Shown here: positions 12,525-50,149 of the stretch, one piece after another
Layout of the letters: every line of letters begins with the position of its first letter
Numbering within the stretch: position 1 is the stretch's first letter
IMG/VR virus record: IMGVR_UViG_3300028558_000791
Location: 1 to 64,000 of that record
Reading direction: 5' to 3' (one strand)
Length of the DNA: 64,000 nucleotides
Made by a program: the position numbers and the translations under genes
Notes under the pieces: generated by a model
Database searches by the model: none
Told to the model about the DNA's origin: nothing
Seen by the model: only the letters and a program-made list of their open reading frames with translations

Positions 12525-12899
12525 ATGTATATCTACTACTGTTGGGTTACAGCACTATTACCGGACTACCAAAACGGTATCATAGCCGGCTTAGTCAAGC
12601 ACGGTTATATGGTTGGGCCAGCAGCTAAAGATGGAAAGGTAGCTTCTATTACGGCAGGCTGCCCTTCTGTATTGATTGCTCTATCTGTCTACAAAGCGGA
12701 TGAGTCTGTTACTGCAACTACTATCTATGACGATATGGTTGTTATTCTAACAGAGATGAATGCAAGATACTATTCTGTGATTGTATCTCTTTCTCATGAA
12801 GCTACATGGGTTGGATCTAATTTCTCTATACCGGCCAAGAAGAAGGCCGAGCCACCACCAGTACCATCTGCGCCTGGTAAAAAGAACGAAGTTAACTAA
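12525..12899 (+). CDS. Hypothetical protein
   Basis: Packed ORF. Confidence 0.55.
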   Translation: MYIYYCWVTALLPDYQNGIIAGLVKHGYMVGPAAKDGKVASITAGCPSVLIALSVYKADESVTATTIYDDMVVILTEMNARYYSVIVSLSHEATWVGSNFSIPAKKKAEPPPVPSAPGKKNEVN

Positions 12900-13501
12900 T
12901 GTTTAGTAAGAAAGTTGCTTGTGGGGAGTTTGTCAAACGACAGACTCCAGAGTCAGGCTATTCACATTTCGAAGGAACTTGGGAACAATTAGAAGAACTT
13001 GTTACTAAACAAATGGAAGTTGACCCAACTAGAATTCATCCAGGTTATAAAGACGGGGTTGTTCTAGTTGATTTGGTTTCTTATGGTTTTCGTTCTGCTA
13101 TCGTAAAGCTGAATGAAGAATCAAAAATGATTGCTAGCTACGCTCCACGAAGATTGGGCGAAGCGCCTTTCATTAGAGTTTCGGCTAAGTCTGAAAAACA
13201 AAAAGCCAAGTATGCATCAGTTGTGTTATATCGACATGACGTGTTAGCGGAGAACAACGAACGCGAAACAGATGCAGAGTGGGAAATCGTGGCTATCAAA
13301 GCACGAACGACAGAGGAAGAGGAGCCAATGGATCCATATACAATGGCTCGCAACTTCCTGCACCTGAAGGGTGGAACCAAGGGTGATTTCACGGCCGAGC
13401 AATTCGCCAAATCAATTGTGTATTGGAACAGCCACTGTATGACTACTGGTAAGCCAAAGTGGTATAAGAAGATGATGAATTTCTTTCGAGGTGATAAGTG
13501 A
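12899..13501 (+). CDS. DUF3228 family protein
   Basis: VVLYRHDVL, PMDPYTMARN, GGT...SIVYW pattern. Confidence 0.65.
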   Translation: MFSKKVACGEFVKRQTPESGYSHFEGTWEQLEELVTKQMEVDPTRIHPGYKDGVVLVDLVSYGFRSAIVKLNEESKMIASYAPRRLGEAPFIRVSAKSEKQKAKYASVVLYRHDVLAENNERETDAEWEIVAIKARTTEEEEPMDPYTMARNFLHLKGGTKGDFTAEQFAKSIVYWNSHCMTTGKPKWYKKMMNFFRGDK

Positions 13502-13803
13502 GTCCGTATCGTCAGGCCGATGAGGCTTCTCAAGAAGAGCTATATGAGCTAGAAAAACAAGAGCAGTTAGCTATGTTTGGTATGCGGCAGACTCCTGATG
13601 GAGAGTGGAAGCCAATCCTTGAGAGGGTAAAGGTTAATCAATGTAGGGACTGTCGGGGATATGGAACCCATGGCAACCCGCTTTGTGGAGCGGTGTATAA
13701 CTGCGAACGTTGTGAAGGATGGGGATACGATCCTGATCCGATAGTCCCGCCAGAACCTGAAAAAAGTTTTTGGCAGAAGATTGTAAAGTTTTTTAAGGAA
13801 TAA
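13498..13803 (+). CDS. Small protein with DnaJ-type CxxCxGxG zinc finger
   Basis: CRDCRGYG...CERCEGWG. Confidence 0.55.
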   Translation: MSPYRQADEASQEELYELEKQEQLAMFGMRQTPDGEWKPILERVKVNQCRDCRGYGTHGNPLCGAVYNCERCEGWGYDPDPIVPPEPEKSFWQKIVKFFKE

Positions 13804-13807
13804 AATA

Positions 13808-15352
13808 ATGAGTAACATTGCGATTAAGACTGATGTACTGAAGGCCGTTATCAAGGATTTCGGTAAGACTGTACCATTTACTATTGGTACGGATAAGAAG
13901 ACGACAATCCCATTCTCTGATGAGAACAAGGATCTCTTGGAGTTTTTGCAGGAGAATATCTCTCTTACTCAAGCGCAGCAAAATGCGTTGAGCAAGTGGT
14001 TGTTTCCGCAGATGAGTGCCGACCAGAAGCTTGGGGATGTAACCTCTAGCTCCGTCAATGATTTCTTCCGTAAGATTGCTTTCATGAACTCTGAAGAGGA
14101 TCCGGTTGTCGAAATCAAGATTGCTAGCAAATGGTATCCGGTGCGGGCCACTGTCTCTAAGTTCAAGAGCATGAGTGGTCATATTATTCAGTTGACCTAC
14201 TACGCCCGGTTGGGCGCATTGCAGTACAGCAAGACTCTGTATATTGGTAACTGGGACTTCACCGACAACTACGACAAGCCTTGGAAGCGAACCTTCGATG
14301 AGGTTTTTGAGAAGCGTGGTCTTCGTGCAGCCTCTAAGGAGTCTGTTGAGAAAGCTAAGAAGCTGAACGCAGAGATCATGTCGTTTGCCGATAAGACTAA
14401 CCGGGCATATGATGCTTGGGGTACCGGCATTACTTACAGTGATTGGTGGGGTTTCGATGACATCAATGTTGGTTGGAAGGACTCTCCTTCTACTGTCATC
14501 ATTGAACCGCTGCTTGAGAATCGGCATGCAGGGCGGGAAATCGATCAGGGTACTGATTGGCACTTGCCATTCGTTCGTGCTTTCTCTATGAAGCACAAGA
14601 CATACATCTATGTGGATATCGAGTCTACCAAGGAGCACGAATACTTCCGAGAGGGTAAGGACAAGATTGTTCTCCCAAAGAAGATGTTCACTGCGTTGGA
14701 TTCTATCTTCAATGCTAAGCGTGAGAATATCTTCGGTGACTTGTTCCATGGTCGCCACGGTGGTATCGTTGTTCTCGCCAATGGACCTTCGGGTGTTGGT
14801 AAGACTCTGACTGCTGAAGTTTTTGCTGAGTACCAGGAGCGTCCTTTGTACTCCATGGAGATGAGCGAGATTGGAACCTCTGTCAAGGAAGTTGAAGCCA
14901 ATCTGCAACGCATCTTTGCTCGTGCAAAGAAGTGGAATGCTGTTCTTCTCTTTGACGAGGCGGACATTTTCTTGTCAGAGCGCGAAGCTTCTGACCTGGA
15001 ACGTTCGGCTATCGTTGGTATCTTCCTGCGCTTGCTGGATTACTATGAGGGAACCTTCTTCCTCACCACTAACCGTGGAGAGGGAATTGATAAGGCATTC
15101 AAGTCCCGCGTTACTCTGTACTTGAACTATCCTGAGCTTTCGGCGGAAACTCGTCGCAAGATTTGGAGAAGCATGTTGGAGTCTGCTGGTTTGAATGTCA
15201 TCGAGGATAACGTTACTTGGTCTGATGTTTCTGACCGCCCACTCAATGGTCGTCAGATTCGTAACCAGGTTCGTCTTCTTAAGCTGATGTATCCTGACAA
15301 CAACATCAAGACTTCTGATGTGCTCGCAAGCCTTGAATTTGCTGCCACCTGA
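13808..15352 (+). CDS. AAA+ ATPase
   Basis: Walker A GPSGVGKT, Walker B LLFDEAD, FLTTNR, arginine finger. Confidence 0.9.
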   Translation: MSNIAIKTDVLKAVIKDFGKTVPFTIGTDKKTTIPFSDENKDLLEFLQENISLTQAQQNALSKWLFPQMSADQKLGDVTSSSVNDFFRKIAFMNSEEDPVVEIKIASKWYPVRATVSKFKSMSGHIIQLTYYARLGALQYSKTLYIGNWDFTDNYDKPWKRTFDEVFEKRGLRAASKESVEKAKKLNAEIMSFADKTNRAYDAWGTGITYSDWWGFDDINVGWKDSPSTVIIEPLLENRHAGREIDQGTDWHLPFVRAFSMKHKTYIYVDIESTKEHEYFREGKDKIVLPKKMFTALDSIFNAKRENIFGDLFHGRHGGIVVLANGPSGVGKTLTAEVFAEYQERPLYSMEMSEIGTSVKEVEANLQRIFARAKKWNAVLLFDEADIFLSEREASDLERSAIVGIFLRLLDYYEGTFFLTTNRGEGIDKAFKSRVTLYLNYPELSAETRRKIWRSMLESAGLNVIEDNVTWSDVSDRPLNGRQIRNQVRLLKLMYPDNNIKTSDVLASLEFAAT

Positions 15353-15412
15353 GTGGAGATAGTCTTTTTGCTTATCTTTTAGAAAGCGGTCCTATTGTGG
15401 CATACAGGGACC

Positions 15413-15874
15413 ATGACTAAAAATAAAAATAAAAAGATAAGCAAAAAGATTAAACCACGTTTTTCGAAAAAACTACCTGTAATAGCAGCTCCTGTTGTGG
15501 TTTTACCGCCAACTGATTCTGCTGTTGCTACCATTCCTGAATCAGAATTTAAAAAGATATCAGGCTTCCCTACTGTAAATGTTCCTACACAGAATATAAA
15601 TAGTACAACTACAGCCGAGCAGGATTTGCATTCTGCTGGTCAAAGAAAGATTAACTATATCTGGGAGTATACTCAGGCAGCTATTGCTTTAATAACTGTA
15701 TTGGCTAACATTATCTACATTTTCGCTATGTTATTCATACCGAATATTTCTACTGGAGCAGCAACTGCCGCAACACTTTTAGCTAATGCTTTCTTCCTTG
15801 TAATTGGTTTCTATTTCGGTAGAACTAACCACGCTCGTATGGGGGAGAATCCTAAAGACACTCTAACATCCTAA
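15413..15874 (+). CDS. Two-TM membrane protein (holin-like)
   Basis: Two TM helices ending VIGFYFG. Confidence 0.45.
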   Translation: MTKNKNKKISKKIKPRFSKKLPVIAAPVVVLPPTDSAVATIPESEFKKISGFPTVNVPTQNINSTTTAEQDLHSAGQRKINYIWEYTQAAIALITVLANIIYIFAMLFIPNISTGAATAATLLANAFFLVIGFYFGRTNHARMGENPKDTLTS

Positions 15875-15885
15875 TAAGGTTTGAA

Positions 15886-16704
15886 ATGATCATCGACTGT
15901 CACACTCATATAGGACGCAACGAACACATCAAAGCCACAGTCAAAGAGCTTCTCCAGTCCATGGACGCGGCTAAGATTGATAAAGCGATGGTGTTTGCCG
16001 GTGACCTAAATGATTGTCCCAATAACTATCTATTGTCTGAGGTGAAACCTCATCGTGACAGACTGTTAGCTGTGGCAGCCGCTCATCCTAATAAGTGGAA
16101 GAAGATGTCTGAAATCCAGCAAGATGCTGGTCGTCTTGCTGATCTCTATCAAGCCGCTGACATTGTGGCCGTCAAATTCTATACAGGATATGACCACTAT
16201 TATCCGGGTGATGCTGCTGTTGCAGAGTATCTAATGGATCTAGAAGATGTTGGTTGTCCAGCCATCTTCCATATGGGAGATTGTCTTTGTTCAATCAATC
16301 ACGCCAAACTTAAGTATGCTCAACCATTGGGCATTGATGAGGTGGCCGTAGATTATCCTGACATGAATTTCATCATTGCTCATATGGCATATCCTTGGCA
16401 GCGTGATGCGGCCGAGGTCTGCTATAAGAACAAGAATGTCTTCGCCGATATTTCTGGGTTCGTTTATAAGAACTTTGAGACGGAAGATAAGATCAAATTC
16501 AAAAAAGTATTGGATGAGTTTTTGGATATCTCCAGTAGCGATAAACTTTTGTTTGGAACTGACTGGCCCATCTCAAATCAAAACTCCTACATTGAAGCTC
16601 TGGATTGGGTTGCCACTAACACGACTAACAAGAAGGTTAGTGAGACGTTCACTCCACAGTACATGACCCAGAACACTATCAAAGCATTCAAACTCAATGT
16701 CTAA
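15886..16704 (+). CDS. Amidohydrolase_2 family metal-dependent hydrolase
   Basis: IIDCHTH, IIAHM, LLFGTDWP. Confidence 0.9.
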   Translation: MIIDCHTHIGRNEHIKATVKELLQSMDAAKIDKAMVFAGDLNDCPNNYLLSEVKPHRDRLLAVAAAHPNKWKKMSEIQQDAGRLADLYQAADIVAVKFYTGYDHYYPGDAAVAEYLMDLEDVGCPAIFHMGDCLCSINHAKLKYAQPLGIDEVAVDYPDMNFIIAHMAYPWQRDAAEVCYKNKNVFADISGFVYKNFETEDKIKFKKVLDEFLDISSSDKLLFGTDWPISNQNSYIEALDWVATNTTNKKVSETFTPQYMTQNTIKAFKLNV

Positions 16705-17311
16705 GCCGAAGGTAAGAACGCGCGGTGATATGGCAGCAATGTCTACTGGCCATCGAGAGGCCATGCAAGACCCTGAAGCTAACTACCGTGCCTGGCAACG
16801 TAATGTAACTGATCCTCTAAAGGAGAAGTCCGAAGAGGAGATCCGTCAGATCCTACAGGAAACTGCTAACCCTTTCGCTGTTTGTTTTGAGCATTGGCTC
16901 GGAGATTTCAATATGTCCACTGGTGTTAGAAATGCTAATGGATTCAATGCCAAGGAAATCTATTACATCGGTGACAAGAAGTGGGACCGGCGTGGTGCAG
17001 TTGGAGTCCATAACTATACGGAAGTACAGTGGATTCCGACTGTTGCGGACTTCGCCTTGCTGAGAGAGAAGTATACATTCGTGGGAATTGACAATGTTCC
17101 CGGCTCAGTTCCAATGGCGAATTACGAATGGCCTGAGAATACTATGATGATTTTCGGGGAAGAAGGTCCTGGTTTAACCACAGCGATGCAGGCTTGGTGC
17201 AAAGATATTGTTCATATTGAAATGTTTGGAAGTGTTAGATCATTTAATTGTGGGTCAGCTTCTGCCATTGCAATGTACGATTTCACCTCGAAATATAAGG
17301 CTCGGCAATAA
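16697..17311 (+). CDS. SpoU/TrmH-family RNA 2'-O-methyltransferase
   Basis: N...R motif 1, FGEEGPGL, IEMFGSVRSFNCGSA. Confidence 0.88.
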   Translation: MSKPKVRTRGDMAAMSTGHREAMQDPEANYRAWQRNVTDPLKEKSEEEIRQILQETANPFAVCFEHWLGDFNMSTGVRNANGFNAKEIYYIGDKKWDRRGAVGVHNYTEVQWIPTVADFALLREKYTFVGIDNVPGSVPMANYEWPENTMMIFGEEGPGLTTAMQAWCKDIVHIEMFGSVRSFNCGSASAIAMYDFTSKYKARQ

Positions 17312-17342
17312 TCATGCCAAGAATTTTTAAGAATACTGCCGC

Positions 17343-17371
17343 TTGACGGCTCCCATTCACATGCTCATACT
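17343..17371 (+). promoter_or_regulatory. sigma70-like promoter containing the GGCTCCCATTCA motif
   Basis: TTGACG-N17-CATACT. Confidence 0.6.
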
Positions 17372-17380
17372 GTGGTATGT

Positions 17381-17659
17381 AAGGGAGACGTGCAGGATAG
17401 CGTCCTGCTATTGAGATGGAAACTCAAGAATACTGGAGTCGCTACCAGAAAGCCATCCCTGCTTGGGGGTTTCGTAAGAAACAAAAGCCCGCTGTTTAGG
17501 ACAGCGATGTTTAAGTAAAACCATTACGAAAGTTGAAGAGTAAGAATCTACAATATAAGTAGTGTCCACATAGCAAAAACAAAAACGGACTACCCAGATA
17601 ACAACACAGATGTACAGACTTCGGTCTCATCGCAGAAACGGGTTAAGCCGTATCCTTTT
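17381..17659 (+). ncRNA. Candidate large structured ncRNA (family unassigned)
   Basis: No ORF in the track; ends pair (AAGGGAGACG/CGTATCCTTT); at least 7 hairpins including UUCG and GNRA loops; own promoter. Confidence 0.6.
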
Positions 17660-17686
17660 ATTCGGAATTCAAAATTGAGAAAGAAC

Positions 17687-17995
17687 ATGTCAGAATTAGA
17701 TCAAGACTTCAATAGTCTCGTGGAGCAGATCAATGCCAAGATCAAAGAGTCTGCCGCGGCATTGCAAGAAGCAAATGCTCTTGCTACTAAGGCCGGCCTC
17801 CCCACTTTGTTTTATTCTCAGTTCACTAGAGAGAACATGCAGTATGACAATCGTTATGCTGAGCCACCTCTCTCTAAAGAAGAACTCAATGAGAAGTGCC
17901 GGGAGATTGAAGACAAGCTTAATCTGATTGATGTTGGTCCACTTGAAGCCGCGATGGGTGATGGTGGTTGGTCAACCTCTTCCTCTTACTGCTGA
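17687..17995 (+). CDS. Hypothetical protein (paralog of 6946-7410)
   Basis: Shared C-terminal motif. Confidence 0.6.
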   Translation: MSELDQDFNSLVEQINAKIKESAAALQEANALATKAGLPTLFYSQFTRENMQYDNRYAEPPLSKEELNEKCREIEDKLNLIDVGPLEAAMGDGGWSTSSSYC

Positions 17996-18002
17996 GGCTC
18001 AT

Positions 18003-18431
18003 ATGAAACAAGCTGGAGTAATGCTCATCATCAAGGATGGTCTCATCCTATCTGTATCTCGCCGATATGATAAGACTATCTTCGGTCTGCCTGGTGGTAA
18101 GTTCAATTCTGAACCGCCCGACAATGATAAGGACACAAAAGATACCGCCATCCGTGAGACCCAAGAAGAGACATCGGTAACCGTTCATGAGGCTACTTTC
18201 ATCTACGAACGAGTGGAACTTGGTGGGGGTCCTAATCCTGTCGATTATTATTCTCGATGTTACTATGCAGATTCTTGGGAAGGTATTCCCCAGAACTCGG
18301 AAGAAGGGGAAGTAAAGTGGCTAACGGCCGAAGAACTTACTTCTACTAAAGCAGCGTTCGGAGTTTACAATCGTAAGACTCTTGAAGTATTCAAAACAAT
18401 GTATCCTGATGTTTACATCAAAGGTGAATGA
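18003..18431 (+). CDS. NUDIX hydrolase
   Basis: LPGG...AIRETQEET Nudix box. Confidence 0.88.
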   Translation: MKQAGVMLIIKDGLILSVSRRYDKTIFGLPGGKFNSEPPDNDKDTKDTAIRETQEETSVTVHEATFIYERVELGGGPNPVDYYSRCYYADSWEGIPQNSEEGEVKWLTAEELTSTKAAFGVYNRKTLEVFKTMYPDVYIKGE

Positions 18432-18745
18432 AAATGAAGACCGATAACCGTCGTGTGTATCCTGATGCATCTCGTCAACCCCGTCACTTGGATGCACTTC
18501 GTAAGGAAGGCGTCAGGGAACGCCAGGAAGCTTATGATAAGCTGACCTTGGATGAGAAGCTTGCAAAGCTTCCGCCTGAGCCTCATGCTGCAAAGCAGCG
18601 TGCTCGTTTGCTGGCCCTGAAGAACAAGAAGGCTCAACCGAAGCAGGAAGAACCCGCTTTGGTTCCAGGTGAACTGCAAGTCGTTATTGCAGACACTTCT
18701 CCGAAAACCAAGACACAAAAGAAGTACATGAAAGGTGCTAAGTGA
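18428..18745 (+). CDS. Hypothetical basic protein
   Basis: Coupled ORF. Confidence 0.55.
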   Translation: MKMKTDNRRVYPDASRQPRHLDALRKEGVRERQEAYDKLTLDEKLAKLPPEPHAAKQRARLLALKNKKAQPKQEEPALVPGELQVVIADTSPKTKTQKKYMKGAK

Positions 18746-18746
18746 A

Positions 18747-19472
18747 ATGAAACTGTTTAATCTTGCTATGGTCGTGATGTTGTCTGTTTCCAGTGTTGCC
18801 GTCGTTGGCTGTGATGTCAACAAGCACATGGAAGACGTTGGCTTCAAGCAGGGAGAGAATCCTGTGGAGAAGGGCACTATCAAGTATGATGGCCTGGTTG
18901 ACAGGGACGAAGCTTGCAATCGAGCATGGGCCGACTATGAAGCCAATCTGACTCGTCGTGGCCAGATGATTCCCCAGGTTGTGGCAGTTGTTCGTGCACA
19001 GTCTGCCAATGAGTCTTCGACTCTCGTTGCAATTCAACAGGCCCAGGCCAATGCAACTCGACCTGAGATCAAGCTCGATACGTCCAAGGGCGACATGGAA
19101 GACCCCGATAAGGTCAAGGCTTTCCAACAGGCTCAGGGTACTCTTGGTACTCAGTTGAGTCGCCTGATGGTTCAGGCTCCTGCTCAGTTCCCGACCCTTG
19201 GTGCAAACCAGGCGTTCCATGATTTGCAGGTACAAATCGAGGGTACTGAGAATCGATTGCTTCGTGCTCGTGAGCAGTACAACAAGACTGTCGAAGCGTT
19301 CAATACTGACCTTCGCCATGTCAGTGGTAAGATTATCAACCCTGTAACGGGTCATGAGTTCAAGCCTCGTGTCTATTTCCAGGCGGATGAGGCTGATAAG
19401 GCTGCTCCGAAGCTGGACTTCGGAACCCCTGCTGCTGCTCCGGCAGTGACGGTTGCCCCTACCCACAAGTGA
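18747..19472 (+). CDS. lemA: LemA family lipoprotein
   Basis: AW...RR...IP, FPTLGANQAF, QIEGTENR...YN; lipobox VVGC. Confidence 0.85.
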   Translation: MKLFNLAMVVMLSVSSVAVVGCDVNKHMEDVGFKQGENPVEKGTIKYDGLVDRDEACNRAWADYEANLTRRGQMIPQVVAVVRAQSANESSTLVAIQQAQANATRPEIKLDTSKGDMEDPDKVKAFQQAQGTLGTQLSRLMVQAPAQFPTLGANQAFHDLQVQIEGTENRLLRAREQYNKTVEAFNTDLRHVSGKIINPVTGHEFKPRVYFQADEADKAAPKLDFGTPAAAPAVTVAPTHK

Positions 19473-19482
19473 TTGAGGTAGA

Positions 19483-19737
19483 ATGAGTATACCAAAAAAG
19501 AAGTTACTTAAGAAACAGGTTCGTAAAATCGAAGATGAATTCGGTGTCGATTCCACTGTTGAAGATATCGTTGATGGTATCCTCAGCATTTTTGGAGATG
19601 ATGACGAAGACGATTCTGAAGATGATGGTAACCTCATTTCTGAGAGTGACGATTCAGATGATGACACCGATGACTCAGACGATGATGATTTCGGTGGCGG
19701 TGATTTCGGAGGAGGCGGCGCCTCCAGTGATTGGTAA
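19483..19737 (+). CDS. Acidic mini-protein ending FGGGDFGGGGASSDW
   Basis: GAGG RBS; TPM-type Gly tail. Confidence 0.7.
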   Translation: MSIPKKKLLKKQVRKIEDEFGVDSTVEDIVDGILSIFGDDDEDDSEDDGNLISESDDSDDDTDDSDDDDFGGGDFGGGGASSDW

Positions 19738-19741
19738 ATAA

Positions 19742-19849
19742 ATGCTAACCATAATTGTCATTATCATAGTGCTTCTAATTCTATTGGCACTAGGCTCCAA
19801 ATTTGGTGGTGGTGATTTCGGGGGCGGCGGTTCGTCTTCCGATTGGTAA
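19742..19849 (+). CDS. 35-aa single-TM peptide ending FGGGDFGGGGSSSDW (not in ORF track)
   Basis: Hand translation MLTIIVIIIVLLILLALGSKFGGGDFGGGGSSSDW*. Confidence 0.75.
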   Translation: MLTIIVIIIVLLILLALGSKFGGGDFGGGGSSSDW

Positions 19850-19872
19850 GCTCAATCTAACAAAAGGACATT

Positions 19873-20109
19873 ATGTTTACTGTTTTGTTTATTATTGTAG
19901 CGGTACTTTTTGTACTCGCCTTAGTGTGGCTAGCTGTCAAGTTTTTTGGCAGCGGTAGTAGTTCTAGTTGGAGCAGTGGTAGCAGTAGCTACTCTAGCTG
20001 GGGCAGTTCCGATTCTAGTTCTTCCAGCAGCTCGTCTAGTTCCTCTTCGGACAGCGGCTCCTTCGGTGGTGGAGATTCCGGTGGTGGTGGCGCTTCAGGT
20101 GATTGGTGA
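19873..20109 (+). CDS. Single-TM Ser-rich mini-protein ending FGGGDSGGGGASGDW
   Basis: AAGGA RBS; TM plus Ser linker plus tail. Confidence 0.75.
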   Translation: MFTVLFIIVAVLFVLALVWLAVKFFGSGSSSSWSSGSSSYSSWGSSDSSSSSSSSSSSSDSGSFGGGDSGGGGASGDW

Positions 20110-20116
20110 TCATATC

Positions 20117-21382
20117 ATGAAAAAGTATCTCTCTATGTTGGTTGCCCTTGCGGTAACCCTGTTCGCTGTCAATAGTTTCGCTTGGGATCCTCCGGCATCT
20201 CCTGCTCCTAAGAGCTGGATTTCGGATAACTCTGGCGTTCTCTCGCCTGCTGCGCATGCCCGCTTGGATGCTAAGCTGAAGATGATTAACCAAAGCTCTG
20301 CTAATGAAGTTGCAGCGCTTGTTCTTCCGACCCTTGATGGGGCTGATATTGCCGATGTTGGCGATTTGACGGCCAAGTCATGGGGTGTTGGTAAGAAGGG
20401 ATTGGACAATGGTGTTCTCGTGGTTCTCGCCATGAAGGAACATAAGAGTCGAATCTCTACGGGTAAGGGTGTTGAGGGAGACCTCCCCGACCTGAAGACC
20501 AAGGATATTTTAGATGCTGCTCGCCCTTATCTTCGTAAGGGTGATGTAGAAGGTGCGCTTGGATTCATTTTCGATAGCGCTTCCAGTTCGATTGCAAACC
20601 ACAAAGCTGAAGCTCAAGCAGCCAAAGAAGCTGCTGCTAAGGCCGGGACTCAGAACCCTGTAACTACGACCACTACAACCACGACTACTGGTAGTACCAA
20701 GTCTGGTTGCTCTGCTTCTGGTGCAGGAGTTAGTGATGGTGGTGGCTTGATGTTACTGTTTGTTGGTGGTGCAGTTCTCTTAGTGTGGTATCTGGCTCGT
20801 CAACAGATGAAGCGCCGTGCGGCTGAAGAAGCTGAACGACTTGCCGCCGCTCAAAGAGCAGATGCTCGTAGGCGTCAAGTTGAGGAACGAGAAGCAGCCC
20901 GTAGGCGTGATGCAGAAAAGGCCCGACAGTTACACTTGAGCAAGCCGACTCCGGTTGTTCCAGTTCCTGAAGTTCCTCGTCCTGCTCCGCGCTCTGTTGC
21001 ACCCCCTCCTGTGGTTCACTACCCAGTGAATGCACCTGTTACTCATCACAAGCCTGTGACTCATCCAGTTGCTACTGTTGCAGTTGCTGCAACTGCTGTA
21101 ACGGCTGCCGCTGTTCTTGCTGAGCAAGAAGCTCGCCAGCATCGTGCTGAGGCCGATCGTCTTCGTCGTGAACGTGAAGAAGAGCGTAATCGTAGGCAGC
21201 GTGAACAGGATGAAGAAGACCGTAGGCGCCGACAGCGTGAACGAGATGAGGAAGATAGCCGTTCTTCCAGTAGTTCTTCTAGCTCCTTTGATTGGGGTGG
21301 AAGCTCTAGTGGTGGAGGTTCTGACTCTGGTGGCTTCGGTGGTGGTGATTCAGGCGGTGGTGGTTCTTCCGGCGACTGGTGA
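20117..21382 (+). CDS. TPM (TLP18.3/Psb32/MOLO-1; YgcG-like) domain membrane protein
   Basis: Signal peptide, WGVGKKGLDNGVL, GKGVEGDLPD, TM, Gly tail ...SSGDW. Confidence 0.88.
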   Translation: MKKYLSMLVALAVTLFAVNSFAWDPPASPAPKSWISDNSGVLSPAAHARLDAKLKMINQSSANEVAALVLPTLDGADIADVGDLTAKSWGVGKKGLDNGVLVVLAMKEHKSRISTGKGVEGDLPDLKTKDILDAARPYLRKGDVEGALGFIFDSASSSIANHKAEAQAAKEAAAKAGTQNPVTTTTTTTTTGSTKSGCSASGAGVSDGGGLMLLFVGGAVLLVWYLARQQMKRRAAEEAERLAAAQRADARRRQVEEREAARRRDAEKARQLHLSKPTPVVPVPEVPRPAPRSVAPPPVVHYPVNAPVTHHKPVTHPVATVAVAATAVTAAAVLAEQEARQHRAEADRLRREREEERNRRQREQDEEDRRRRQRERDEEDSRSSSSSSSSFDWGGSSSGGGSDSGGFGGGDSGGGGSSGDW

Positions 21383-21422
21383 AGCCGGGTAAGTGCAAAG
21401 CCATTAAATCGCGCGTGCCCCA

Positions 21423-21454
21423 GCAACCCCTAATCTTGACTGGTTAGGGGTTGC
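21423..21454 (+). terminator. Hairpin after LemA/TPM locus
   Basis: GCAACCCCTAA/TTAGGGGTTGC inverted repeat. Confidence 0.55.
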
Positions 21455-21457
21455 CTA

Positions 21458-21826
21458 ATGTTTTTAGGTTTATACCCACTAGATAATTTTGGCCCCAAGT
21501 CCCACAATAAGGTAGGAGACTTCTTTCAATACAGATACATTGTAGAAGACTCCGAGTTTACTGAGGAATGGATAGGGCTTTGTAAGCAACGTCTCAACTA
21601 TTCTGATGTTAGATGCGGTGCCGTTATCTCATGCTATGAAGCAAAGAAGGATAACGTCCCCTACCAGCTAGCTCTGTATCATAGATACATGATGGATACC
21701 CATAAATGGTATAAGCTGGAGGATGAGATTAGGTATAACATCGAGCATACTCCTATGTATGGTGAGTATGCGCCGCAAGTTCTTCATTATATGAAGCGTA
21801 TCAATAACCTCAAAGCATTTTGGTAA
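21458..21826 (+). CDS. Hypothetical phage protein
   Basis: C-terminal RINNLKAFW resembles RIIKLKAFL of 62016-62222. Confidence 0.55.
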   Translation: MFLGLYPLDNFGPKSHNKVGDFFQYRYIVEDSEFTEEWIGLCKQRLNYSDVRCGAVISCYEAKKDNVPYQLALYHRYMMDTHKWYKLEDEIRYNIEHTPMYGEYAPQVLHYMKRINNLKAFW

Positions 21827-21831
21827 TACAA

Positions 21832-22344
21832 ATGTCTCACGAACCCGCTAGAGATTCTCATTGTTCATACTGTGGAACCAGATTCACGGAGCAAAAGGAA
21901 TGGCCCCGCAAATGTTTCCGTTGCTACAATGATTCCTATAAGAATCCACTGCCTGTAGTGGTTACTCTCTTGAATGTTTGGGAGAATGGTAAGCTCGGTA
22001 CCCTCATTCAGCAGCGTAATCATGACCCCAAGAAGGGTGAGTGGGCATTTACTGGTGGTTACATTGACCAGGATGAGACCTGGCAAGAGGCTATCGTCCG
22101 TGAAGTACGAGAAGAACTTGGACTTGAAACATCTGTAGGTGATTATCTACTGTCTGATGTTGTATCTAATACAGATAAGTCTAACCTATTAGTATTCTCT
22201 ATTTGTCTTAAAGCATTTGATATGAAGGAAATACATTTCATTCCTAATGCCGAGGTAACTGCAATCCAAATTATTCATGAACCAATCGAGTTGGCGTTCC
22301 CAACCCATACAGAAATGTTGGCTTTGAGATTCGAGAAGAAGTAA
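21832..22344 (+). CDS. NUDIX hydrolase with N-terminal zinc ribbon
   Basis: CSYC/CFRC; GGYID...REVREELG. Confidence 0.9.
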   Translation: MSHEPARDSHCSYCGTRFTEQKEWPRKCFRCYNDSYKNPLPVVVTLLNVWENGKLGTLIQQRNHDPKKGEWAFTGGYIDQDETWQEAIVREVREELGLETSVGDYLLSDVVSNTDKSNLLVFSICLKAFDMKEIHFIPNAEVTAIQIIHEPIELAFPTHTEMLALRFEKK

Positions 22345-22670
22345 TGGCTAGTACACCTGATTCAGAAAAGACCGAACGAATAGGATGGCTTTGTGTCACT
22401 ATGATGATACTCGGCCTGTTCCTTATGATTACTAAGAGTAATGCCTGTGGCTCTGTTTTTGGCTCTTGTAATGCTCCTGCTAAGACTGAGGCTTGCAAGG
22501 ATGAGTTCTTTGAGATTGGTGATAATAGTCGATACGGCAATAACCATTCTTGTACTCCAGGCGCACGCGCTGAAGTAGTCTCCTCTCCTCCCGCACCTAA
22601 GCCTGGTATCATATGCCACTGTATAAATAAGGATCAGGACGGCCAGGCTACTCAGGACGCCGGCAAGTAA
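22344..22670 (+). CDS. Membrane-anchored Cys-rich protein
   Basis: TM plus several Cys; DAG motif. Confidence 0.5.
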   Translation: MASTPDSEKTERIGWLCVTMMILGLFLMITKSNACGSVFGSCNAPAKTEACKDEFFEIGDNSRYGNNHSCTPGARAEVVSSPPAPKPGIICHCINKDQDGQATQDAGK

Positions 22671-22780
22671 GTAATTTAATAGATTAGTTTACGGGCTTGA
22701 CAATTGATTTTATAGGGTTAAGTTTATAGGGAAGGCTCCCATTCAGTGCTCCGGCACTCGTAGAGTAAGGACGAAATAAA

Positions 22781-23896
22781 ATGTCGTGGTCTGATAAACT
22801 AAAAGAAGCTGGCGTTAGTATCCATGTTATTGCGACTGGTGGTGGTGCTGGTTTACAGCAACTACTTTGGCAAGTACCTGGTAGCTCTGCTTATTTATCA
22901 GGCGCTAGTTTTCCTTACTCCCCTGAAGAACAGAGAGAGTTGCTTGGTTTCATGCCTGAGCATTTTTCTTCTGAGGAGGCAGCTATCGACCTAGCATCTG
23001 AAGCTTATATGAAGGCTTACAAGTTTGGTGGTAAGAAGCCAGTTGGACTTGGGATTGCAGCTTCAGTTGCTTCTGAGAAAATTCATCGTGGAGATCATCG
23101 AGTTTTTGCATGTATCATTACTGAAGAGCAAGTCCGTACTTGCCAGTATACCCTAGAGAAAGGTGCGGGTTCTGAGGTTAGATTGTTGGATGGTGAGACC
23201 TGTGATGACATTGGCTTCCTGCTTCTTACTGAAGCCCTGGCTTTAGATGAGGTTGAATACACTCATCCAGACCATCCGTATCAAACAAAGCGTGCAGAGG
23301 ATAAGGCCAAGGCTCGTTTCTTTGAGCGACCTTTCTTTGCAGCCAACGGCCAGCGTTTGAGTACCATGCCAAACAACAAGCATGTGGCCTTGATGCCTGG
23401 TGCTTACAATCCTCCTCATGAGGGACATTTTGGTACCGCTCAACATGTGATGGATGAGTATGGTCGCACCGTAGTGTATGAGGTAACGGCCGAACCTCCT
23501 CATAAAGAAGCGCTTCCAGTGCAGCTTTTACTACAACGAGCCAAGCTATTGCACGGCCGTGATAGACTCTTTACTCGTAAGGAGCCTTTTTACATCGATA
23601 AGGCCCGAGCATTCCCAGGTATTCCTTTAGTTCTTGGGGCAGATGCAATGGTTCGCATGTTGGATCCAAAGTGGGGAATAGAATTAACTCCTCTATTCAA
23701 GGAGTTCAAGAAGCTTGACACCAAATTATTGGTGGCAGGGCGTACTATTGGTGACAAGTTTGTTACCTTAGATGATATCTCAAAGAATTTACGCCTACAA
23801 GATCCTCATGCGTGGGGACAAACTGTAGGGGTGATGCTTCCAATCAGTGGTAGGATTGATATTTCTTCTACCGAACTGAGGGGTAAGTTGGTATAA
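22781..23896 (+). CDS. CinA/PncC-like domain fused to HIGH-type nucleotidyltransferase (NMNAT-like)
   Basis: ATGGGAG...VPGSS N-domain; PGAYNPPHEGH, LGAD, ISSTELR. Confidence 0.75.
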   Translation: MSWSDKLKEAGVSIHVIATGGGAGLQQLLWQVPGSSAYLSGASFPYSPEEQRELLGFMPEHFSSEEAAIDLASEAYMKAYKFGGKKPVGLGIAASVASEKIHRGDHRVFACIITEEQVRTCQYTLEKGAGSEVRLLDGETCDDIGFLLLTEALALDEVEYTHPDHPYQTKRAEDKAKARFFERPFFAANGQRLSTMPNNKHVALMPGAYNPPHEGHFGTAQHVMDEYGRTVVYEVTAEPPHKEALPVQLLLQRAKLLHGRDRLFTRKEPFYIDKARAFPGIPLVLGADAMVRMLDPKWGIELTPLFKEFKKLDTKLLVAGRTIGDKFVTLDDISKNLRLQDPHAWGQTVGVMLPISGRIDISSTELRGKLV

Positions 23897-23902
23897 AGAT
23901 AT

Positions 23903-24016
23903 GGAGCGGTGGCGGAATGGCGTACGCGGGTGGGAAAGGATCGTGCATGGTCCTGATCACCTATTCCAAACTAATGCAACTAGTAGGAATTGCACGTTCA
24001 ACTCGTGCCCGCTCCA
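23903..24016 (+). ncRNA. tRNA-like RNA with extended anticodon arm and long variable arm
   Basis: GGAGCGG/CCGCTCC acceptor, D arm, GCACG-TTCAACT-CGTGC T arm; no 7-nt anticodon loop. Confidence 0.75.
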
Positions 24017-24022
24017 CAATAG

Positions 24023-24415
24023 GTGACTGATATGTATAGTGTAACTCGCCGTTCACACGAGCGCTACGGCTCCGTTATCCACATCGAGAGATCGGAGAAT
24101 GGGAGGCTAATGACACCCTTCCAAGCGGTTCAATCTGCAATGAAAGAACGAAGACTTTGGATAGAATCTGGAGTAAAGAAAGTTCGAATCTTAGTAGATG
24201 ACAAGGTAATGTCAACCAAACAGGCAGAACACTGGGCTCATGAAGAGTATATCTCATTACCTAAGTGTGAAGGATGCGCCAAGATTCTTGATGGAGATAT
24301 TCATACTCATCAATTATCGGGTACTAAGTTCTTCTGTTCAAAGGTTTGTGCTGACCGGGACTATATTGAAGAAGTAGAGAGGCTGAAAGATGAAGAAGAA
24401 ATCGACTACCTCTGA
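24023..24415 (+). CDS. Hypothetical protein with C-terminal zinc finger
   Basis: CEGC...FCSKVC. Confidence 0.55.
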   Translation: MTDMYSVTRRSHERYGSVIHIERSENGRLMTPFQAVQSAMKERRLWIESGVKKVRILVDDKVMSTKQAEHWAHEEYISLPKCEGCAKILDGDIHTHQLSGTKFFCSKVCADRDYIEEVERLKDEEEIDYL

Positions 24416-24704
24416 CCATCCGACTATTGGTATGGGGGCTACAATCCATATTGGATCAGACTCTCATCCAGCAACAGTTATTCAAGTTACCAATAATGGT
24501 AAGAGGGTTGTTGTTCAAGAAGATAATGCGACTAGGACAGATAGTAATGGTATGTCTGAGTCTCAAAGTTACACATACGAACCTGATCCAAATGGTGCTA
24601 CCTATATAGCCACTTTACGTAAGGATGGAAGGTACCGAATTACTGGCGGTAAGATGCCAATTTCTATTGGATTCCGCCGTAAATATTACGATTACTCGTT
24701 CTAA
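24390..24704 (+). CDS. Conserved phage protein
   Basis: GMGAT...SD.HP.TV...YYDYSF pattern. Confidence 0.6.
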   Translation: MKKKSTTSDHPTIGMGATIHIGSDSHPATVIQVTNNGKRVVVQEDNATRTDSNGMSESQSYTYEPDPNGATYIATLRKDGRYRITGGKMPISIGFRRKYYDYSF

Positions 24705-42727: not shown

Positions 42728-42801
42728 GACTTTGTGGACAAATTATTAAGTCACTCCCGTTAGAGGGAGAGATGTAAGTGCAAGGCTTGCCAAGGTCACC
42801 A
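42728..42801 (+). ncRNA. tRNA-like RNA with 6-nt anticodon loop (GTTAGA)
   Basis: GACTTTG/CAAGGTC plus ACCA; CTCCC/GGGAG; T-loop TGCAAGG. Confidence 0.7.
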
Positions 42802-50072: not shown

Positions 50073-50149
50073 GGGTCTTTTGATGTAAAGGCTGGCCTCT
50101 AGACTTTAGTGCTAGAGGACATCGGGTTCGACTCCCGAATGATCCGCCA
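50073..50149 (+). ncRNA. tRNA-like RNA, no D stem, loop CT-TTA-GT
   Basis: GGGTC/GATCC plus GCCA; CCTCTAG/CTAGAGG; TCGGG-TTCGACT-CCCGA. Confidence 0.65.

What the first reader, a model, noticed from the sequence alone, without database searches (positions are those of the whole stretch)
18747..21382. LemA-TPM locus with four adjacent genes sharing one C-terminal FGGGD(F/S)GGGGxSxDW tail
Seen: after lemA come an acidic soluble 84-aa protein, a 35-aa TM peptide missing from the ORF track (19742-19849), a 78-aa TM plus Ser-linker protein and the TPM protein. All four end in the same ~15-aa motif with terminal DW, encoded with different codons. Known: lemA next to TPM (YgcG-like) genes with a Gly-rich W-ending tail is a common bacterial arrangement of unclear function. 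Inference: the tail is an autonomous ligand or sorting signal, and the phage makes tail-only variants with different anchors and linker lengths as decoys or modulators of an envelope complex.
Basis: partly seen in the sequence, partly recalled or inferred. Interest (0 to 1): 0.8.

Follow-up and report, generated by a model that had tools for sequence, protein, structure and literature searches.

The report
Megaphage LemA–TPM operon with tail-only genes
A giant phage carries a membrane-protein operon in which four neighbouring genes, three of them tiny, end in the same 15-residue glycine-rich tail; the tiny genes are real and conserved, and the tail behaves like a portable docking tag of unknown partner that many bacteria and phages share.

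Summary
Window 18747-21382 holds lemA, three mini-genes (84, 35 and 78 aa) and a TPM (YgcG-type) membrane protein. All four non-LemA products end in FGGGD[F/S]GGGG[A/S]S[S/G]DW. There are 4 matches in 64 kb against 0 in 100 shuffles, and the copies differ mostly at third codon positions.

The window belongs to a ~480-kb rhizosphere megaphage contig. In 16 of 16 related megaphage lemA+TPM loci, 1-3 tail-only genes lie in the operon. Against the nearest syntenic relatives, synonymous sites are saturated and dN/dS is 0.10-0.40, so these are genes, not decayed duplications.

The tail is tied to the C-terminus: 40 of 118 core matches lie exactly 5 residues before the stop. It ends 115 of 120 TPM homologues that were found through the TPM domain alone. 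It also ends many unrelated phage proteins.

A profile of the small TM minis also matches the last ~60 residues of bacterial TPM proteins, so the minis are TPM-less copies of that membrane-plus-tail module.

Charge distribution and the soluble carriers place the tail in the cytoplasm, while LemA (invariant lipobox) and the TPM domain are periplasmic.

The function is inferred only: a C-terminal docking motif displayed at several tether lengths. The partner is unknown. The "sorting signal" and "bacteriocin" readings are not supported.

The parts
17928..18431 (+). NUDIX hydrolase gene; conserved upstream neighbour in the syntenic block (context, same tightly packed gene string)
   Evidence: Pfam NUDIX E 2.8e-10. 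Conserved upstream of lemA in L021, L006, L007, L254-L257, L259, L260, L266, L268.
18428..18745 (+). p105, a basic protein of unknown function. It overlaps the NUDIX stop and ends 1 nt before lemA. Conserved in relatives.
   Evidence: No Pfam, NCBIfam or PHROG family. tblastn finds homologues in L006, L007, L015, L021.
18747..19472 (+). lemA: LemA-family protein with an N-terminal lipoprotein signal (lipobox VVGC, Cys22), predicted to be periplasmic
   Evidence: Pfam PF04011 E 7.2e-33. PDB 2ETD E 4.5e-14. G21-C22 invariant in six phage LemAs (A2).
19483..19737 (+). p84: soluble tail carrier. Basic helix (5-20), acidic amphipathic helix (24-37), acidic disordered spacer, then tail FGGGDFGGGGASSDW.
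   Evidence: 17 database homologues of 73-86 aa with invariant N-terminal and tail positions. dN/dS 0.10 against L021. AF2 gives two helices then disorder, mean pLDDT 59. GAGGT Shine-Dalgarno 5-9 nt upstream.
19742..19849 (+). p35: minimal carrier, one TM helix (1-19), G-S-K, then tail FGGGDFGGGGSSSDW. Its ATG lies 1 nt after the p84 stop, which suggests translational coupling.
   Evidence: Orthologues in L021/L147, L008 and L257/L258, 63-83% identical among the orthologues, dN/dS 0.14-0.22 with pS 0.37-0.64. Aligns as an internally deleted form of the 56-76 aa TM-helix2-tail family (A4).
19873..20109 (+). p78: TM helix (4-22), Lys, Ser-rich spacer of about 40 residues with interspersed W/Y, then tail FGGGDSGGGGASGDW
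   Evidence: Orthologues of 61-146 aa with variable spacer length in L008, L021, L257/258, L146, L254, L260, L262, L145, L268. dN/dS 0.18-0.40. Sub-threshold Pfam PF25184 YxzE hit (19.5 bits, GA 40).
20117..21382 (+). TPM (YgcG-type) membrane protein. Signal peptide, periplasmic TPM domain (35-148), Thr-rich linker, TM 209-227, Arg-rich and Pro-rich cytoplasmic region, Ser/Gly spacer, then tail FGGGDSGGGGSSGDW.
   Evidence: Pfam PF04536 E 8.5e-29. PDB 7TBR, 2KW7, 5ANP. Hydropathy and charge analysis. 115 of 120 homologues found via the TPM domain end in the tail.
19690..19734 (+). tail copy 1 (p84)
19802..19846 (+). tail copy 2 (p35)
20062..20106 (+). tail copy 3 (p78)
21335..21379 (+). tail copy 4 (TPM)
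21423..21454 (+). intrinsic-terminator-like hairpin (13-bp stem, 7 G-C pairs, then a T run) that closes the operon 41 nt after the TPM stop

Best explanation
SHOWN. This is a conserved megaphage operon: (NUDIX, p105), lipoprotein LemA, three tail-only mini-proteins, TPM membrane protein, terminator. The shared tail is a short linear motif fixed at the C-terminus, consensus [S/G]GG-F-GGG-D-[S/F]-GGGG-[S/A]-S-[S/G]-D-[W>Y,F]-COOH. It is the same motif that ends bacterial YgcG-type TPM proteins encoded next to lemA. The minis are protein-coding genes under purifying selection. The small TM minis (p35 and its 56-76 aa relatives) are homologous to the C-terminal membrane-plus-tail module of TPM proteins, that is, they are TPM-less copies of it.

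INFERRED, topology. LemA and the TPM domain face the periplasm. All tails face the cytoplasm at the end of disordered spacers of graded length: about 0 residues in p35, about 40 in p78, about 190 after the membrane anchor in TPM (about 70 if the doubtful third hydrophobic segment is counted), plus a non-membrane carrier, p84.

INFERRED, mechanism. The tail, with its free terminal aromatic carboxylate, docks onto a conserved cytoplasmic partner. This would work like the SSB C-terminal tip or the chemoreceptor NWETF pentapeptide, which sit at the ends of flexible tethers. By co-expressing several tail carriers with the TPM protein, the phage would create a dense, multi-reach array of this docking motif under the membrane. 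That array would either over-recruit the host factor that normally engages the host's own YgcG tails, or compete for it, and so retune an envelope-maintenance or envelope-stress module during a long infection. The partner and the direction of the effect (recruit or titrate) are not known.
For: Motif and chance: 4 matches against 0 expected; none elsewhere in the six frames.

Conservation of the minis: the L021 locus is syntenic, with all four tail genes at 60-75% aa identity. pS is 0.64-0.74 and pN 0.17-0.25, giving dN/dS of 0.10 for p84, 0.14-0.22 for p35 and 0.18-0.40 for p78, against 0.07 for lemA and 0.10-0.16 for TPM. All 16 megaphage lemA+TPM loci examined carry 1-3 tail-only genes. Among 120 bacterial loci with the same tail, at most 3 have a genuine tail-only neighbour.

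C-terminal anchoring: of 118 in-frame core matches in viral contigs, 40 lie exactly 5 residues before the stop, and no other distance occurs more than 3 times. The last residue is W29/F7/Y4 and the penultimate is D in 34 of 40.

Unbiased logo: 115 of 120 homologues found through TPM residues 25-200 end in the tail; F-15 in 111/115, D-11 in 103, D-2 in 95, and an aromatic last residue in all 115.

Portability: the tail sits on unrelated soluble phage proteins (Zn-ribbon proteins, proteins of 96-275 aa) behind Ser/Asp-rich spacers and on non-TPM bacterial proteins.

Origin of the minis: the A4 profile hits about 60 proteins of 56-76 aa, and also the last ~60 residues of about 20 proteins of 228-333 aa.

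Topology: K/R directly follows the TM in every TM carrier (R/K in 40 of 59 in A5). Most TPM homologues have a net positive flank after the anchor. The p84 family and other carriers have no signal peptide. The lipobox is invariant in phage LemA.

Disorder of the tail: AF2 pLDDT is 52-61.

Operon features: Shine-Dalgarno sites or coupling, tight spacing, and a terminator.

Partial within-genome matching of the terminal aromatic: L268 Y/Y/Y, L148 F/F, L267 F/F.

Context from papers: a TPM membrane protein (B. subtilis SamH/YdjH), together with SamG, recruits a cytosolic SPFH protein and PspA (PMC13713150, PMC8581546). yxzE belongs to the sigmaW envelope-stress regulon (PMC3498285). lemA and a TPM gene are induced in an sppA mutant (PMC13236525).
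Against: No partner was identified, and no experiment or multimer model links the tail to any protein. No RNA run was listed, so neither transcription nor translation is directly shown. Topology is inferred from charge rules only. The window's TPM has a third moderately hydrophobic Ala/Val/Thr stretch (317-335); if it spanned the membrane, that tail would be periplasmic. 27 of 120 homologues have such a third segment. Terminal-residue matching within genomes has exceptions (L150, L151, L266). Two other huge phages with lemA-TPM have no minis, so the minis are not required for LemA-TPM function as such. L008 keeps p35, a p78-like mini and TPM without lemA, and L261 keeps TPM alone.
Confidence: 0.5

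Rival explanations
1. Self-assembly model. The tails and their Ser/Gly spacers, dotted with W/Y/F and D, act as stickers and spacers that bind each other. The minis would then be stoichiometric subunits of one LemA-TPM membrane assembly or membrane-tethered condensate, with no separate cytoplasmic partner.
For: The genes sit in one tightly packed, partly translationally coupled operon. The spacers are low-complexity Ser/Gly with periodic aromatics, for example SSSSWSSGSSSYSSWGSS in p78 and SSYDSGSSYDSG in relatives. The TM minis derive from the TPM protein's own membrane module and could pack with it. The terminal aromatic partly co-varies within genomes.
Against: Generic sticker-spacer cohesion does not explain near-invariant sequence at a fixed distance from the C-terminus across phyla. 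Most bacteria have a single tail-bearing protein per locus. Many unrelated soluble phage proteins carry the tail with no LemA/TPM within the 5-10 kb flanks that were fetched.
Confidence: 0.22
2. Degron model. The tail is a C-terminal recognition tag for a cytoplasmic or membrane protease (FtsH, Lon or Clp type) that sets TPM turnover. The tail-only minis would saturate that protease, or would themselves be short-lived regulators.
For: The motif depends on the free C-terminus with a terminal aromatic preceded by a disordered stretch, as C-terminal degrons are. An AAA+ ATPase gene (13808-15352) is conserved about 4 kb upstream in the same syntenic block.
Against: The tail does not resemble known bacterial C-terminal degrons, which are nonpolar (ssrA-like LAA); this rests on established knowledge and was not tested. 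The upstream AAA protein has no protease domain in Pfam. This is really a special case of the docking model, with the protease as partner.
Confidence: 0.1
3. Export, sorting-signal or bacteriocin model. The tail directs secretion or surface sorting, or the small peptides are secreted antimicrobial peptides, as the Pfam name 'YxzE-like putative bacteriocin' suggests.
For: Weak Pfam PF25184 matches: p78 at 19.5 bits and L118-90aa at 34.7 bits, both below the gathering score of 40. LemA and the TPM domain are extracytoplasmic.
Against: The 'bacteriocin' label rests only on a BAGEL context score (PMC1538908). There is no double-glycine leader, and no ABC-transporter or immunity genes are present. 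The tail lacks the hydrophobic helix plus basic cluster of known C-terminal sorting signals. K/R follows the TM anchors, and p84-type carriers have no signal peptide.
Confidence: 0.05
4. The mini-ORFs are non-functional remnants of duplications of the 3' end of the TPM gene.
For: They share the tail with TPM, are short and low-complexity, and p35 is missed by gene callers.
Against: The frames are intact in every relative. Synonymous sites are saturated while dN/dS is 0.10-0.40. Each ortholog group keeps its own features: the p84 N-terminus, the DF versus DS tail variant, and K after the TM. Profile searching finds about 60 clusters (at 50% identity) of full-length minis.
Confidence: 0.02

Closest known systems
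Bacterial LemA / YgcG-type TPM (often plus a second TPM) operons, e.g. Bizionia argentinensis BA41/BA42 and the Acinetobacter lemA-ygcG-DUF477 locus
   Same: LemA is followed by a TPM protein with signal peptide, TPM domain, TM anchor and a Gly-rich tail ending in W. The tail motif is identical in many Acidobacteriota, Bacteroidota, Novosphingobium and Cyanobacteria.
   Different: The phage operon lacks the signal-peptide-less second TPM protein seen in L118. It inserts 1-3 TPM-less tail carriers, its LemA is a lipoprotein with an extra linker, and its TPM has a long charged/Pro-rich cytoplasmic spacer. The function of the bacterial system is itself unknown.
Pfam PF25184, 'YxzE-like putative bacteriocin' (B. 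subtilis yxzE, sigmaW regulon)
   Same: Small proteins of about 65 aa with an N-terminal TM. The last ~25 profile positions match the tail (L219 residues 141-170 against profile 41-65). The three database homologues of p78, and two TPM proteins, carry this Pfam hit.
   Different: None of the window's minis reaches the gathering score (p78 19.5 bits; p35 and p84 have no hit). I could not inspect the YxzE sequence itself. The family is Bacillota-centred, and nothing links it to LemA/TPM in the papers searched.
B. subtilis PspA-SamGHI (YdjGHI) envelope-stress module
   Same: A membrane protein with an extracellular TPM domain (SamH), together with SamG, brings a soluble cytoplasmic protein (the SPFH protein SamI, then PspA) to the membrane (PMC13713150, PMC8581546). 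This is the kind of trans-membrane link proposed here.
   Different: That operon has no LemA. Whether SamH has this tail, or uses it, is not stated in the papers read. No SPFH or PspA gene is near the phage operon.
C-terminal tethered docking motifs: the SSB C-terminal tip (DDDIPF) and the chemoreceptor NWETF pentapeptide (mechanistic analogues, from established knowledge)
   Same: A short conserved peptide at the extreme C-terminus, with an aromatic last residue and neighbouring acidic residues, at the end of a disordered, often Gly-rich tether.
   Different: The sequences are unrelated, and a partner is known for those motifs but not for this one. The resemblance is functional analogy only.
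MamQ (magnetosome LemA-family protein)
   Same: The LemA domain matches NCBIfam MamQ at E 2.6e-12.
   Different: The score is far below the equivalog cut-off (46.7 against 250 bits), and there is no magnetosome context.

Membership tests
LemA family (PF04011) | LemA domain above the Pfam gathering score | tested here: met
   114 bits against GA 26.2, E 7.2e-33, full profile 1-149. PDB 2ETD 'lemA protein' E 4.5e-14.
LemA family (PF04011) | N-terminal membrane anchor | tested here: met
   Hydrophobic segment 6-24 ending in lipobox VVGC. G21-C22 is invariant in six phage homologues. 19 of 92 bacterial LemAs also have a lipobox.
TPM domain / YgcG-type membrane protein (PF04536, COG1512) | TPM domain above the gathering score | tested here: met
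   100.5 bits against GA 22.1. PDB 7TBR E 1.2e-19, 2KW7, 5ANP.
TPM domain / YgcG-type membrane protein (PF04536, COG1512) | Architecture: signal peptide, TPM domain, TM anchor, Gly-rich tail ending in an aromatic residue | tested here: met
   Segments 5-23 and 209-227 plus the tail. The same architecture is seen in bacterial loci L022, L118 and L263.
TPM domain (phosphatase/ATPase activity) | Catalytic activity of the TPM domain | not testable with these tools
   Activities are reported for AtTLP18.3, Rv2345 and BA41 (PMC13456599).
YxzE-like (PF25184), for p35, p78 and p84 | Score above the Pfam gathering threshold (40 bits) | tested here: not met
   p78 scores 19.5 bits (E 0.002); p35 and p84 have no hit. 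The best related mini, L118-90aa, scores 34.7 bits.
YxzE-like (PF25184), for p35, p78 and p84 | Small protein with an N-terminal TM and the C-terminal Gly-rich tail | tested here: met
   This holds for p35 and p78 but not for p84, which has no TM. The profile's C-terminal end aligns to the tail.
DUF7206 (PF23836, viral), for p84 | Pfam match | tested here: not met
   p84 has no hit. There is only a weak Atlas feature neighbour (score 0.65) and a 0.003 hit for L011-73aa.
Class II bacteriocin / microcin precursor | N-terminal double-glycine leader, with a dedicated ABC exporter or immunity gene nearby | tested here: not met
   The N-termini are TM helices or a basic helix. The neighbours are NUDIX, LemA, TPM, AAA, SpoU and amidohydrolase genes.
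C-terminal sorting signals (LPXTG, PEP-CTERM, GlyGly-CTERM) | Motif followed by a hydrophobic helix and a basic cluster at the C-terminus | tested here: not met
   The tail ends ...S-S-G-D-W-COOH with nothing after it.
C-terminal docking SLiM (functional class, as SSB-Ct / NWETF) | Fixed position at the extreme C-terminus, disordered context, conserved aromatic terminal residue | tested here: met
C-terminal docking SLiM (functional class, as SSB-Ct / NWETF) | A defined binding partner | not testable with these tools
   No multimer prediction or interaction data were available.

The most novel reading that the evidence does not exclude
The FGGGD-x-GGGG-xxx-D-W-COOH tail is an unrecognised, widely distributed C-terminal docking motif that defines a hub on the cytoplasmic face of the bacterial inner membrane, namely the partner of YgcG-type TPM proteins. 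Phages would exploit it by motif mimicry. Megaphages would do so with arrays of TPM-less tail carriers of graded tether length, and many smaller phages by tagging unrelated soluble proteins with the same tail. This would be the bacterial counterpart of viral SLiM mimicry in eukaryotes.
Probability: 0.3. Interest if true: 0.8.

Novelty: new variant of a known kind. Interest (0 to 1): 0.6.

Why it matters
LemA and YgcG-type TPM proteins are among the commonest bacterial envelope proteins with no known function. The Gly-rich tail has been noticed only in passing: one preprint sentence, COG-based 'YgcG' labels on tail-only proteins, and a Pfam family misnamed as a bacteriocin.

This work shows that the tail is a C-terminus-anchored motif, portable and under strong selection. 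It also shows that a whole clade of 0.2-0.5 Mb phages has split it from the TPM domain and multiplied it. That gives a concrete handle on the problem: a 15-residue peptide that can be used as bait to find the missing cytoplasmic partner.

It also adds three small-protein families that gene callers partly miss (the p84 family, the p35/hairpin family and the TM-Ser-spacer family) to the catalogue of phage auxiliary genes. If the mimicry reading holds, it would be a clear case of short-linear-motif mimicry by phages.

Tried and rejected
Searches that gave nothing:
- blastn of the locus against GenBank phages, near and distant modes: no match.
- NCBIfam and PHROGs for the three minis: no meaningful family.
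- RNA sequencing runs: none was listed. Read laying on DNA runs only showed the same sequence in a second rhizosphere sample, plus fragments in a pond sample, with no informative polymorphism.
- ESM Atlas look-alikes: all scores were 0.72 or lower, so they are leads only (YxzE, 'YgcG fragment', DUF7206).
- Literature: nine searches found no paper on the tail or on LemA-TPM function. The only mention is one sentence that non-photosynthetic TPM homologues carry a Gly-rich C-terminal extension (10.1101/2025.05.08.652833). Scholz 2021 says nothing about the YdjH tail.

Ideas considered and rejected:
- Read-through by the suppressor-like tRNA(UUA). TAA is the commonest stop in the window (31 of 57 long ORFs) and ends 26 of 43 tail genes in relatives, so there is no recoding.
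- RTX-like Ca2+ motif. The register of G and D does not fit GGxGxD (by inspection).
- LemA as the tail's receptor. LemA is predicted to be periplasmic (lipobox, or an N-in anchor), while the tails are predicted to be cytoplasmic.
- The cytoplasmic second TPM protein (BA42-like, L118 4895-5341) as a universal receptor. It is absent from the Acidobacterial locus inspected (L022) and from the phage operon.
- The seven 'multi-tail' bacterial loci from the first count. Three of them were spurious GC-rich ORFs.


Full report
1. THE OBSERVATION

On the + strand the window encodes:
- lemA, 18747-19472
- an 84-aa ORF, 19483-19737 (p84)
- a 35-aa ORF, 19742-19849 (p35)
- a 78-aa ORF, 19873-20109 (p78)
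- a TPM-domain protein, 20117-21382

Pfam confirms LemA (E 7e-33) and TPM (E 8.5e-29); the three small proteins have no family above threshold. All four non-LemA proteins end in FGGGD[F/S]GGGG[A/S]S[S/G]DW followed by a stop.

A six-frame regex finds this tail four times in 64 kb and nowhere else. The degenerate DNA pattern gives 4 matches against 0.00 in 100 shuffles. In the DNA alignment of the four tails, 29 of 45 positions are invariant, and 10 of the 16 variable positions are pure third-position synonymous changes.

One correction is needed. The mechanical ORF 19946-21382 (478 aa), which a public gene call also uses (P0021), starts at a TTG inside p78. Homologues start at the signal peptide MKK..., so the TPM gene starts at ATG 20117.

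2. WHAT THE WINDOW IS

The window is part of IMG/VR contig IMGVR_UViG_3300028558_000791, 480,838 bp; L020 is identical to window 14863-24437. It comes from a rhizosphere metagenome. It has 29 tRNA genes in 64 kb, almost all genes on one strand, PHROG hits to phage families and no nucleotide match to GenBank phages. It is a megaphage.

The genes from p106 (17675) to TPM are tightly packed or overlapping:
- lemA, p84, p78 and TPM have Shine-Dalgarno-like sequences.
- p35 has none, but its ATG lies 1 nt after the p84 stop.
- A 13-bp-stem terminator follows TPM at 21423-21454.

3. ARE THE MINI-ORFS GENES?

Related megaphage contigs were collected in four ways: by tail pattern, by LemA profile, by p84 homologues, and by TPM and mini homologues. 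Contig L021/L147 (267 kb) has the whole block: p106, NUDIX, p105, lemA, p84h(81), p35, p78h(76), TPM, NUDIX, NMNAT. It is 60-75% identical at the protein level.

Nei-Gojobori counts give:

| Gene | dN/dS |
|---|---|
| p84 | 0.10 |
| p35 | 0.14-0.22 |
| p78 | 0.18-0.40 |
| lemA | 0.07 |
| TPM | 0.10-0.16 |

In the comparisons between the window and L021, pS is 0.64-0.74 (saturated) and pN is 0.17-0.25. The minis are therefore as constrained as the flanking known genes.

Ortholog-specific features persist:
- The p84 family (19 sequences, A3) keeps an invariant N-terminus (M..PK.K...K..R..E), a VEDIVDGILSIF helix, and the 'DF' form of the tail.
- The p78 family keeps a Lys right after the TM, while its Ser-rich spacer varies from about 16 to 78 residues.

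All 16 megaphage loci of this group that have lemA and TPM (window, L145-L151, L254, L255, L257, L259, L260, L262, L266, L268) carry 1-3 tail-only genes. L008 keeps p35, a p78-like mini and TPM without lemA. L261 has TPM only. Direct expression evidence is lacking: no RNA run was listed.

4. WHAT THE TAIL IS

(a) It is tied to the C-terminus. I scanned viral contigs for the core FGGGD.GGGG without requiring a stop. This gave 118 non-redundant in-frame matches. Forty have exactly five more residues and then a stop; no other distance occurs more than three times. In those 40, the last residue is W29/F7/Y4 and the penultimate is D in 34. Where the tail is extended (L007/L145 138-aa protein, P0131), the extension again ends in SSSDW.

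(b) It is the normal end of this type of TPM protein. Of 120 homologues retrieved using only TPM residues 25-200, 115 end in the tail. The logo is [S/G]GG-F(111/115)-GGG-D(103)-[S86/F25]-GGGG-[S/A]-S-[S/G]-D(95)-[W99/Y10/F6].

(c) It is widespread in bacteria and linked to LemA. Of these, 93 have lemA and 106 have a TPM domain within 8 kb. The Acinetobacter-type YgcG ends in the variant ...FGGGGASGSW.

(d) It is portable. It ends many unrelated phage proteins: Zn-ribbon proteins, a 96-108 aa family, and proteins of 166-275 aa. In these it usually sits behind a Ser/Asp-rich spacer and often after a short hydrophobic or amphipathic helix. It also ends some non-TPM bacterial proteins.

(e) It is predicted to be disordered on its own: AF2 pLDDT is 52-61.

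5. ORIGIN OF THE MINIS

Most relatives have, in place of p35, a 56-76 aa protein built as TM1, R/K, Gly, a 13-residue second helix with a conserved D/E, a Gly/Ser spacer, and the tail. p35 aligns to it as an internal deletion that removes helix 2 and the spacer (A4). The two forms are mutually exclusive among loci.

A profile of A4 was searched against 1.84 billion representative proteins and gave 91 hits. About 60 are full-length minis. About 20 are proteins of 228-333 aa in which the match covers the last ~60 residues, namely the TM, second helix and tail of ordinary bacterial TPM proteins. The small TM minis are therefore TPM-less copies of the TPM protein's C-terminal membrane module.

Three sampled minis all lie in NUDIX-lemA-mini-TPM phage contexts. 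In bacteria, genuine tail-only neighbours are rare: L118 (90 aa), L107 (157 aa) and perhaps L129, out of 120 loci. Pfam's PF25184 ('YxzE-like putative bacteriocin') captures the same kind of protein in Bacillota:
- Its last ~25 profile positions align to the tail.
- The database homologues of p78, and two TPM proteins, carry it.
- The window's minis are below its gathering score.
- The 'bacteriocin' name rests only on a BAGEL context score (PMC1538908).
- yxzE belongs to the sigmaW envelope-stress regulon (PMC3498285).

6. TOPOLOGY (INFERRED)

Phage LemA has an invariant lipobox (G21-C22 in six sequences). Bacterial LemAs start MK followed by a hydrophobic stretch, and 19 of 92 have a lipobox. 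The LemA domain is therefore periplasmic in these systems, as is the TPM domain, which follows a signal peptide.

Four observations point to a cytoplasmic location for the tails:
- Every TM carrier has K/R immediately after the TM and none before it.
- Most TPM homologues have a positively charged flank after the anchor.
- The TPM spacer is Arg-rich.
- The p84 family and many other carriers have no signal peptide.

If all tails share one partner, it is cytoplasmic. There is a caveat: a third, weakly hydrophobic Ala/Val/Thr segment lies at TPM residues 317-335, and 27 of 120 homologues have one.

7. MECHANISM

Shown: a conserved C-terminal motif on disordered tethers of graded length, co-encoded with a periplasmic LemA/TPM pair. 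The tether is about 0 residues in p35, about 40 in p78, and about 190 after the membrane anchor in TPM (about 70 if the doubtful third hydrophobic segment is counted), plus the non-membrane carrier p84.

Inferred: the tail docks a conserved cytoplasmic partner through its terminal Asp-aromatic carboxylate. This is analogous to SSB-Ct or the chemoreceptor NWETF pentapeptide. The phage would multiply the motif to over-recruit or to titrate the factor that host YgcG tails engage.

Supporting context from papers:
- B. subtilis SamH (a TPM membrane protein), together with SamG, brings the soluble SPFH protein SamI, and through it PspA, to the membrane (PMC13713150, PMC8581546).
- lemA and TPM genes respond to membrane stress in Flavobacterium (PMC13236525).

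Partial within-genome matching of the last residue (L268 Y/Y/Y, L148 F/F, L267 F/F, with exceptions L150, L151 and L266) fits either a shared partner or tail-tail contacts. The rivals are self-assembly, a degron, export or bacteriocin, and pseudogenes; they are weighed in their own sections.

8. COMPARISON AND NOVELTY

LemA and TPM membership are met. The LemA-YgcG pairing and the existence of a Gly-rich extension are known (10.1101/2025.05.08.652833 and COG-based labels).

As far as the searched literature shows, the following are new:
- the definition of the tail as a C-terminus-anchored motif;
- its portability onto unrelated phage proteins;
- the demonstration that a megaphage clade has split the membrane-plus-tail module from the TPM domain and keeps 1-3 such genes, plus a soluble carrier family, under selection.

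Two other huge phages (LR745206, LR745208) have lemA-TPM without minis, so the minis are a clade-specific elaboration. I rate this a new variant of a known kind, with interest 0.6. The mechanism remains a hypothesis that a peptide pull-down could test directly.

Noticed in passing
window 50073-50149 (also 42728-42801): ARAGORN calls a tRNA with anticodon UUA (ochre-suppressor-like) and one with an abnormal anticodon loop, among 29 tRNA genes. TAA is nevertheless the commonest stop codon of long ORFs (31 of 57), so the genome is not TAA-recoded. The role of this tRNA is open.
   Followed up: partly
window 19946-21382 versus 19873-20109: The public gene call for the TPM protein (P0021, 478 aa) starts at TTG 19946 and overlaps p78 by 164 nt in another frame. 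Homologues show the true start is ATG 20117. In relatives L257 and L258 the gene callers missed p35 and the p78 homologue and instead called a spurious minus-strand ORF.
   Followed up: yes
window 12899-17311 and 21820-23896: A conserved syntenic block surrounds the operon: DUF3228, AAA+ ATPase (13808-15352), amidohydrolase, SpoU methylase, then after TPM a Zn-ribbon NUDIX (21820-22344) and a CinA-like/nucleotidyltransferase protein (22781-23896). In relative L261 the TPM gene sits between a PARG-like gene and NMNAT-NUDIX and NAMPT genes. This suggests an NAD / ADP-ribose metabolism neighbourhood.
   Followed up: partly
L260:2826-3155: A 109-aa tail carrier in a 462-kb relative has a Cys/His-rich N-terminus, a short hydrophobic helix and a run of about 37 consecutive Asp residues before the tail. 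This is an extreme version of p84's acidic spacer on a non-homologous N-terminus.
   Followed up: no
A5 alignment (60 minis), columns 32 and 45; e.g. L149:4647-4844: The 56-76 aa minis have a conserved R/K after TM1 (40 of 59) and a conserved D/E in the middle of the short second hydrophobic helix (44 of 58). These may form an intramembrane or interfacial charge pair. The same helix occurs in bacterial TPM C-termini. Its role is unexplained.
   Followed up: partly
window 21065-21121 (TPM residues 317-335): An Ala/Val/Thr-rich stretch (PVATVAVAATAVTAAAVLA, KD 1.96) lies inside the otherwise charged cytoplasmic spacer of TPM. 27 of 120 homologues have a third hydrophobic segment. It is unclear whether it spans or touches the membrane.
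   Followed up: partly
L263 (CAKLQH020000003.1 156259-162774, 'Acinetobacter phage MD-2021a'): This record in the phage collection carries gltB, gltD, lemA, ygcG, DUF477, a pilin gene and an O-antigen ligase. It looks like bacterial chromosome filed as phage.
   Followed up: no
L118:4895-5341: In a Bacteroidota locus, lemA is followed by a 148-aa TPM protein without a signal peptide (BA42-like, cytoplasmic), then the secreted TPM protein with TM and tail, then a 90-aa TM-plus-tail protein. TPM domains therefore appear to sit on both sides of the membrane.
   Followed up: partly
L164, L177, L185, L200, L201 (viral contigs): In some phage proteins the core FGGGDFGGGG is followed not by xxxDW-stop but by a long Ser/Tyr/Asp repeat (SSYDSGSSYDSG...) that again ends in an aromatic residue. 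This is a FUS-like low-complexity extension of the tail.
   Followed up: no
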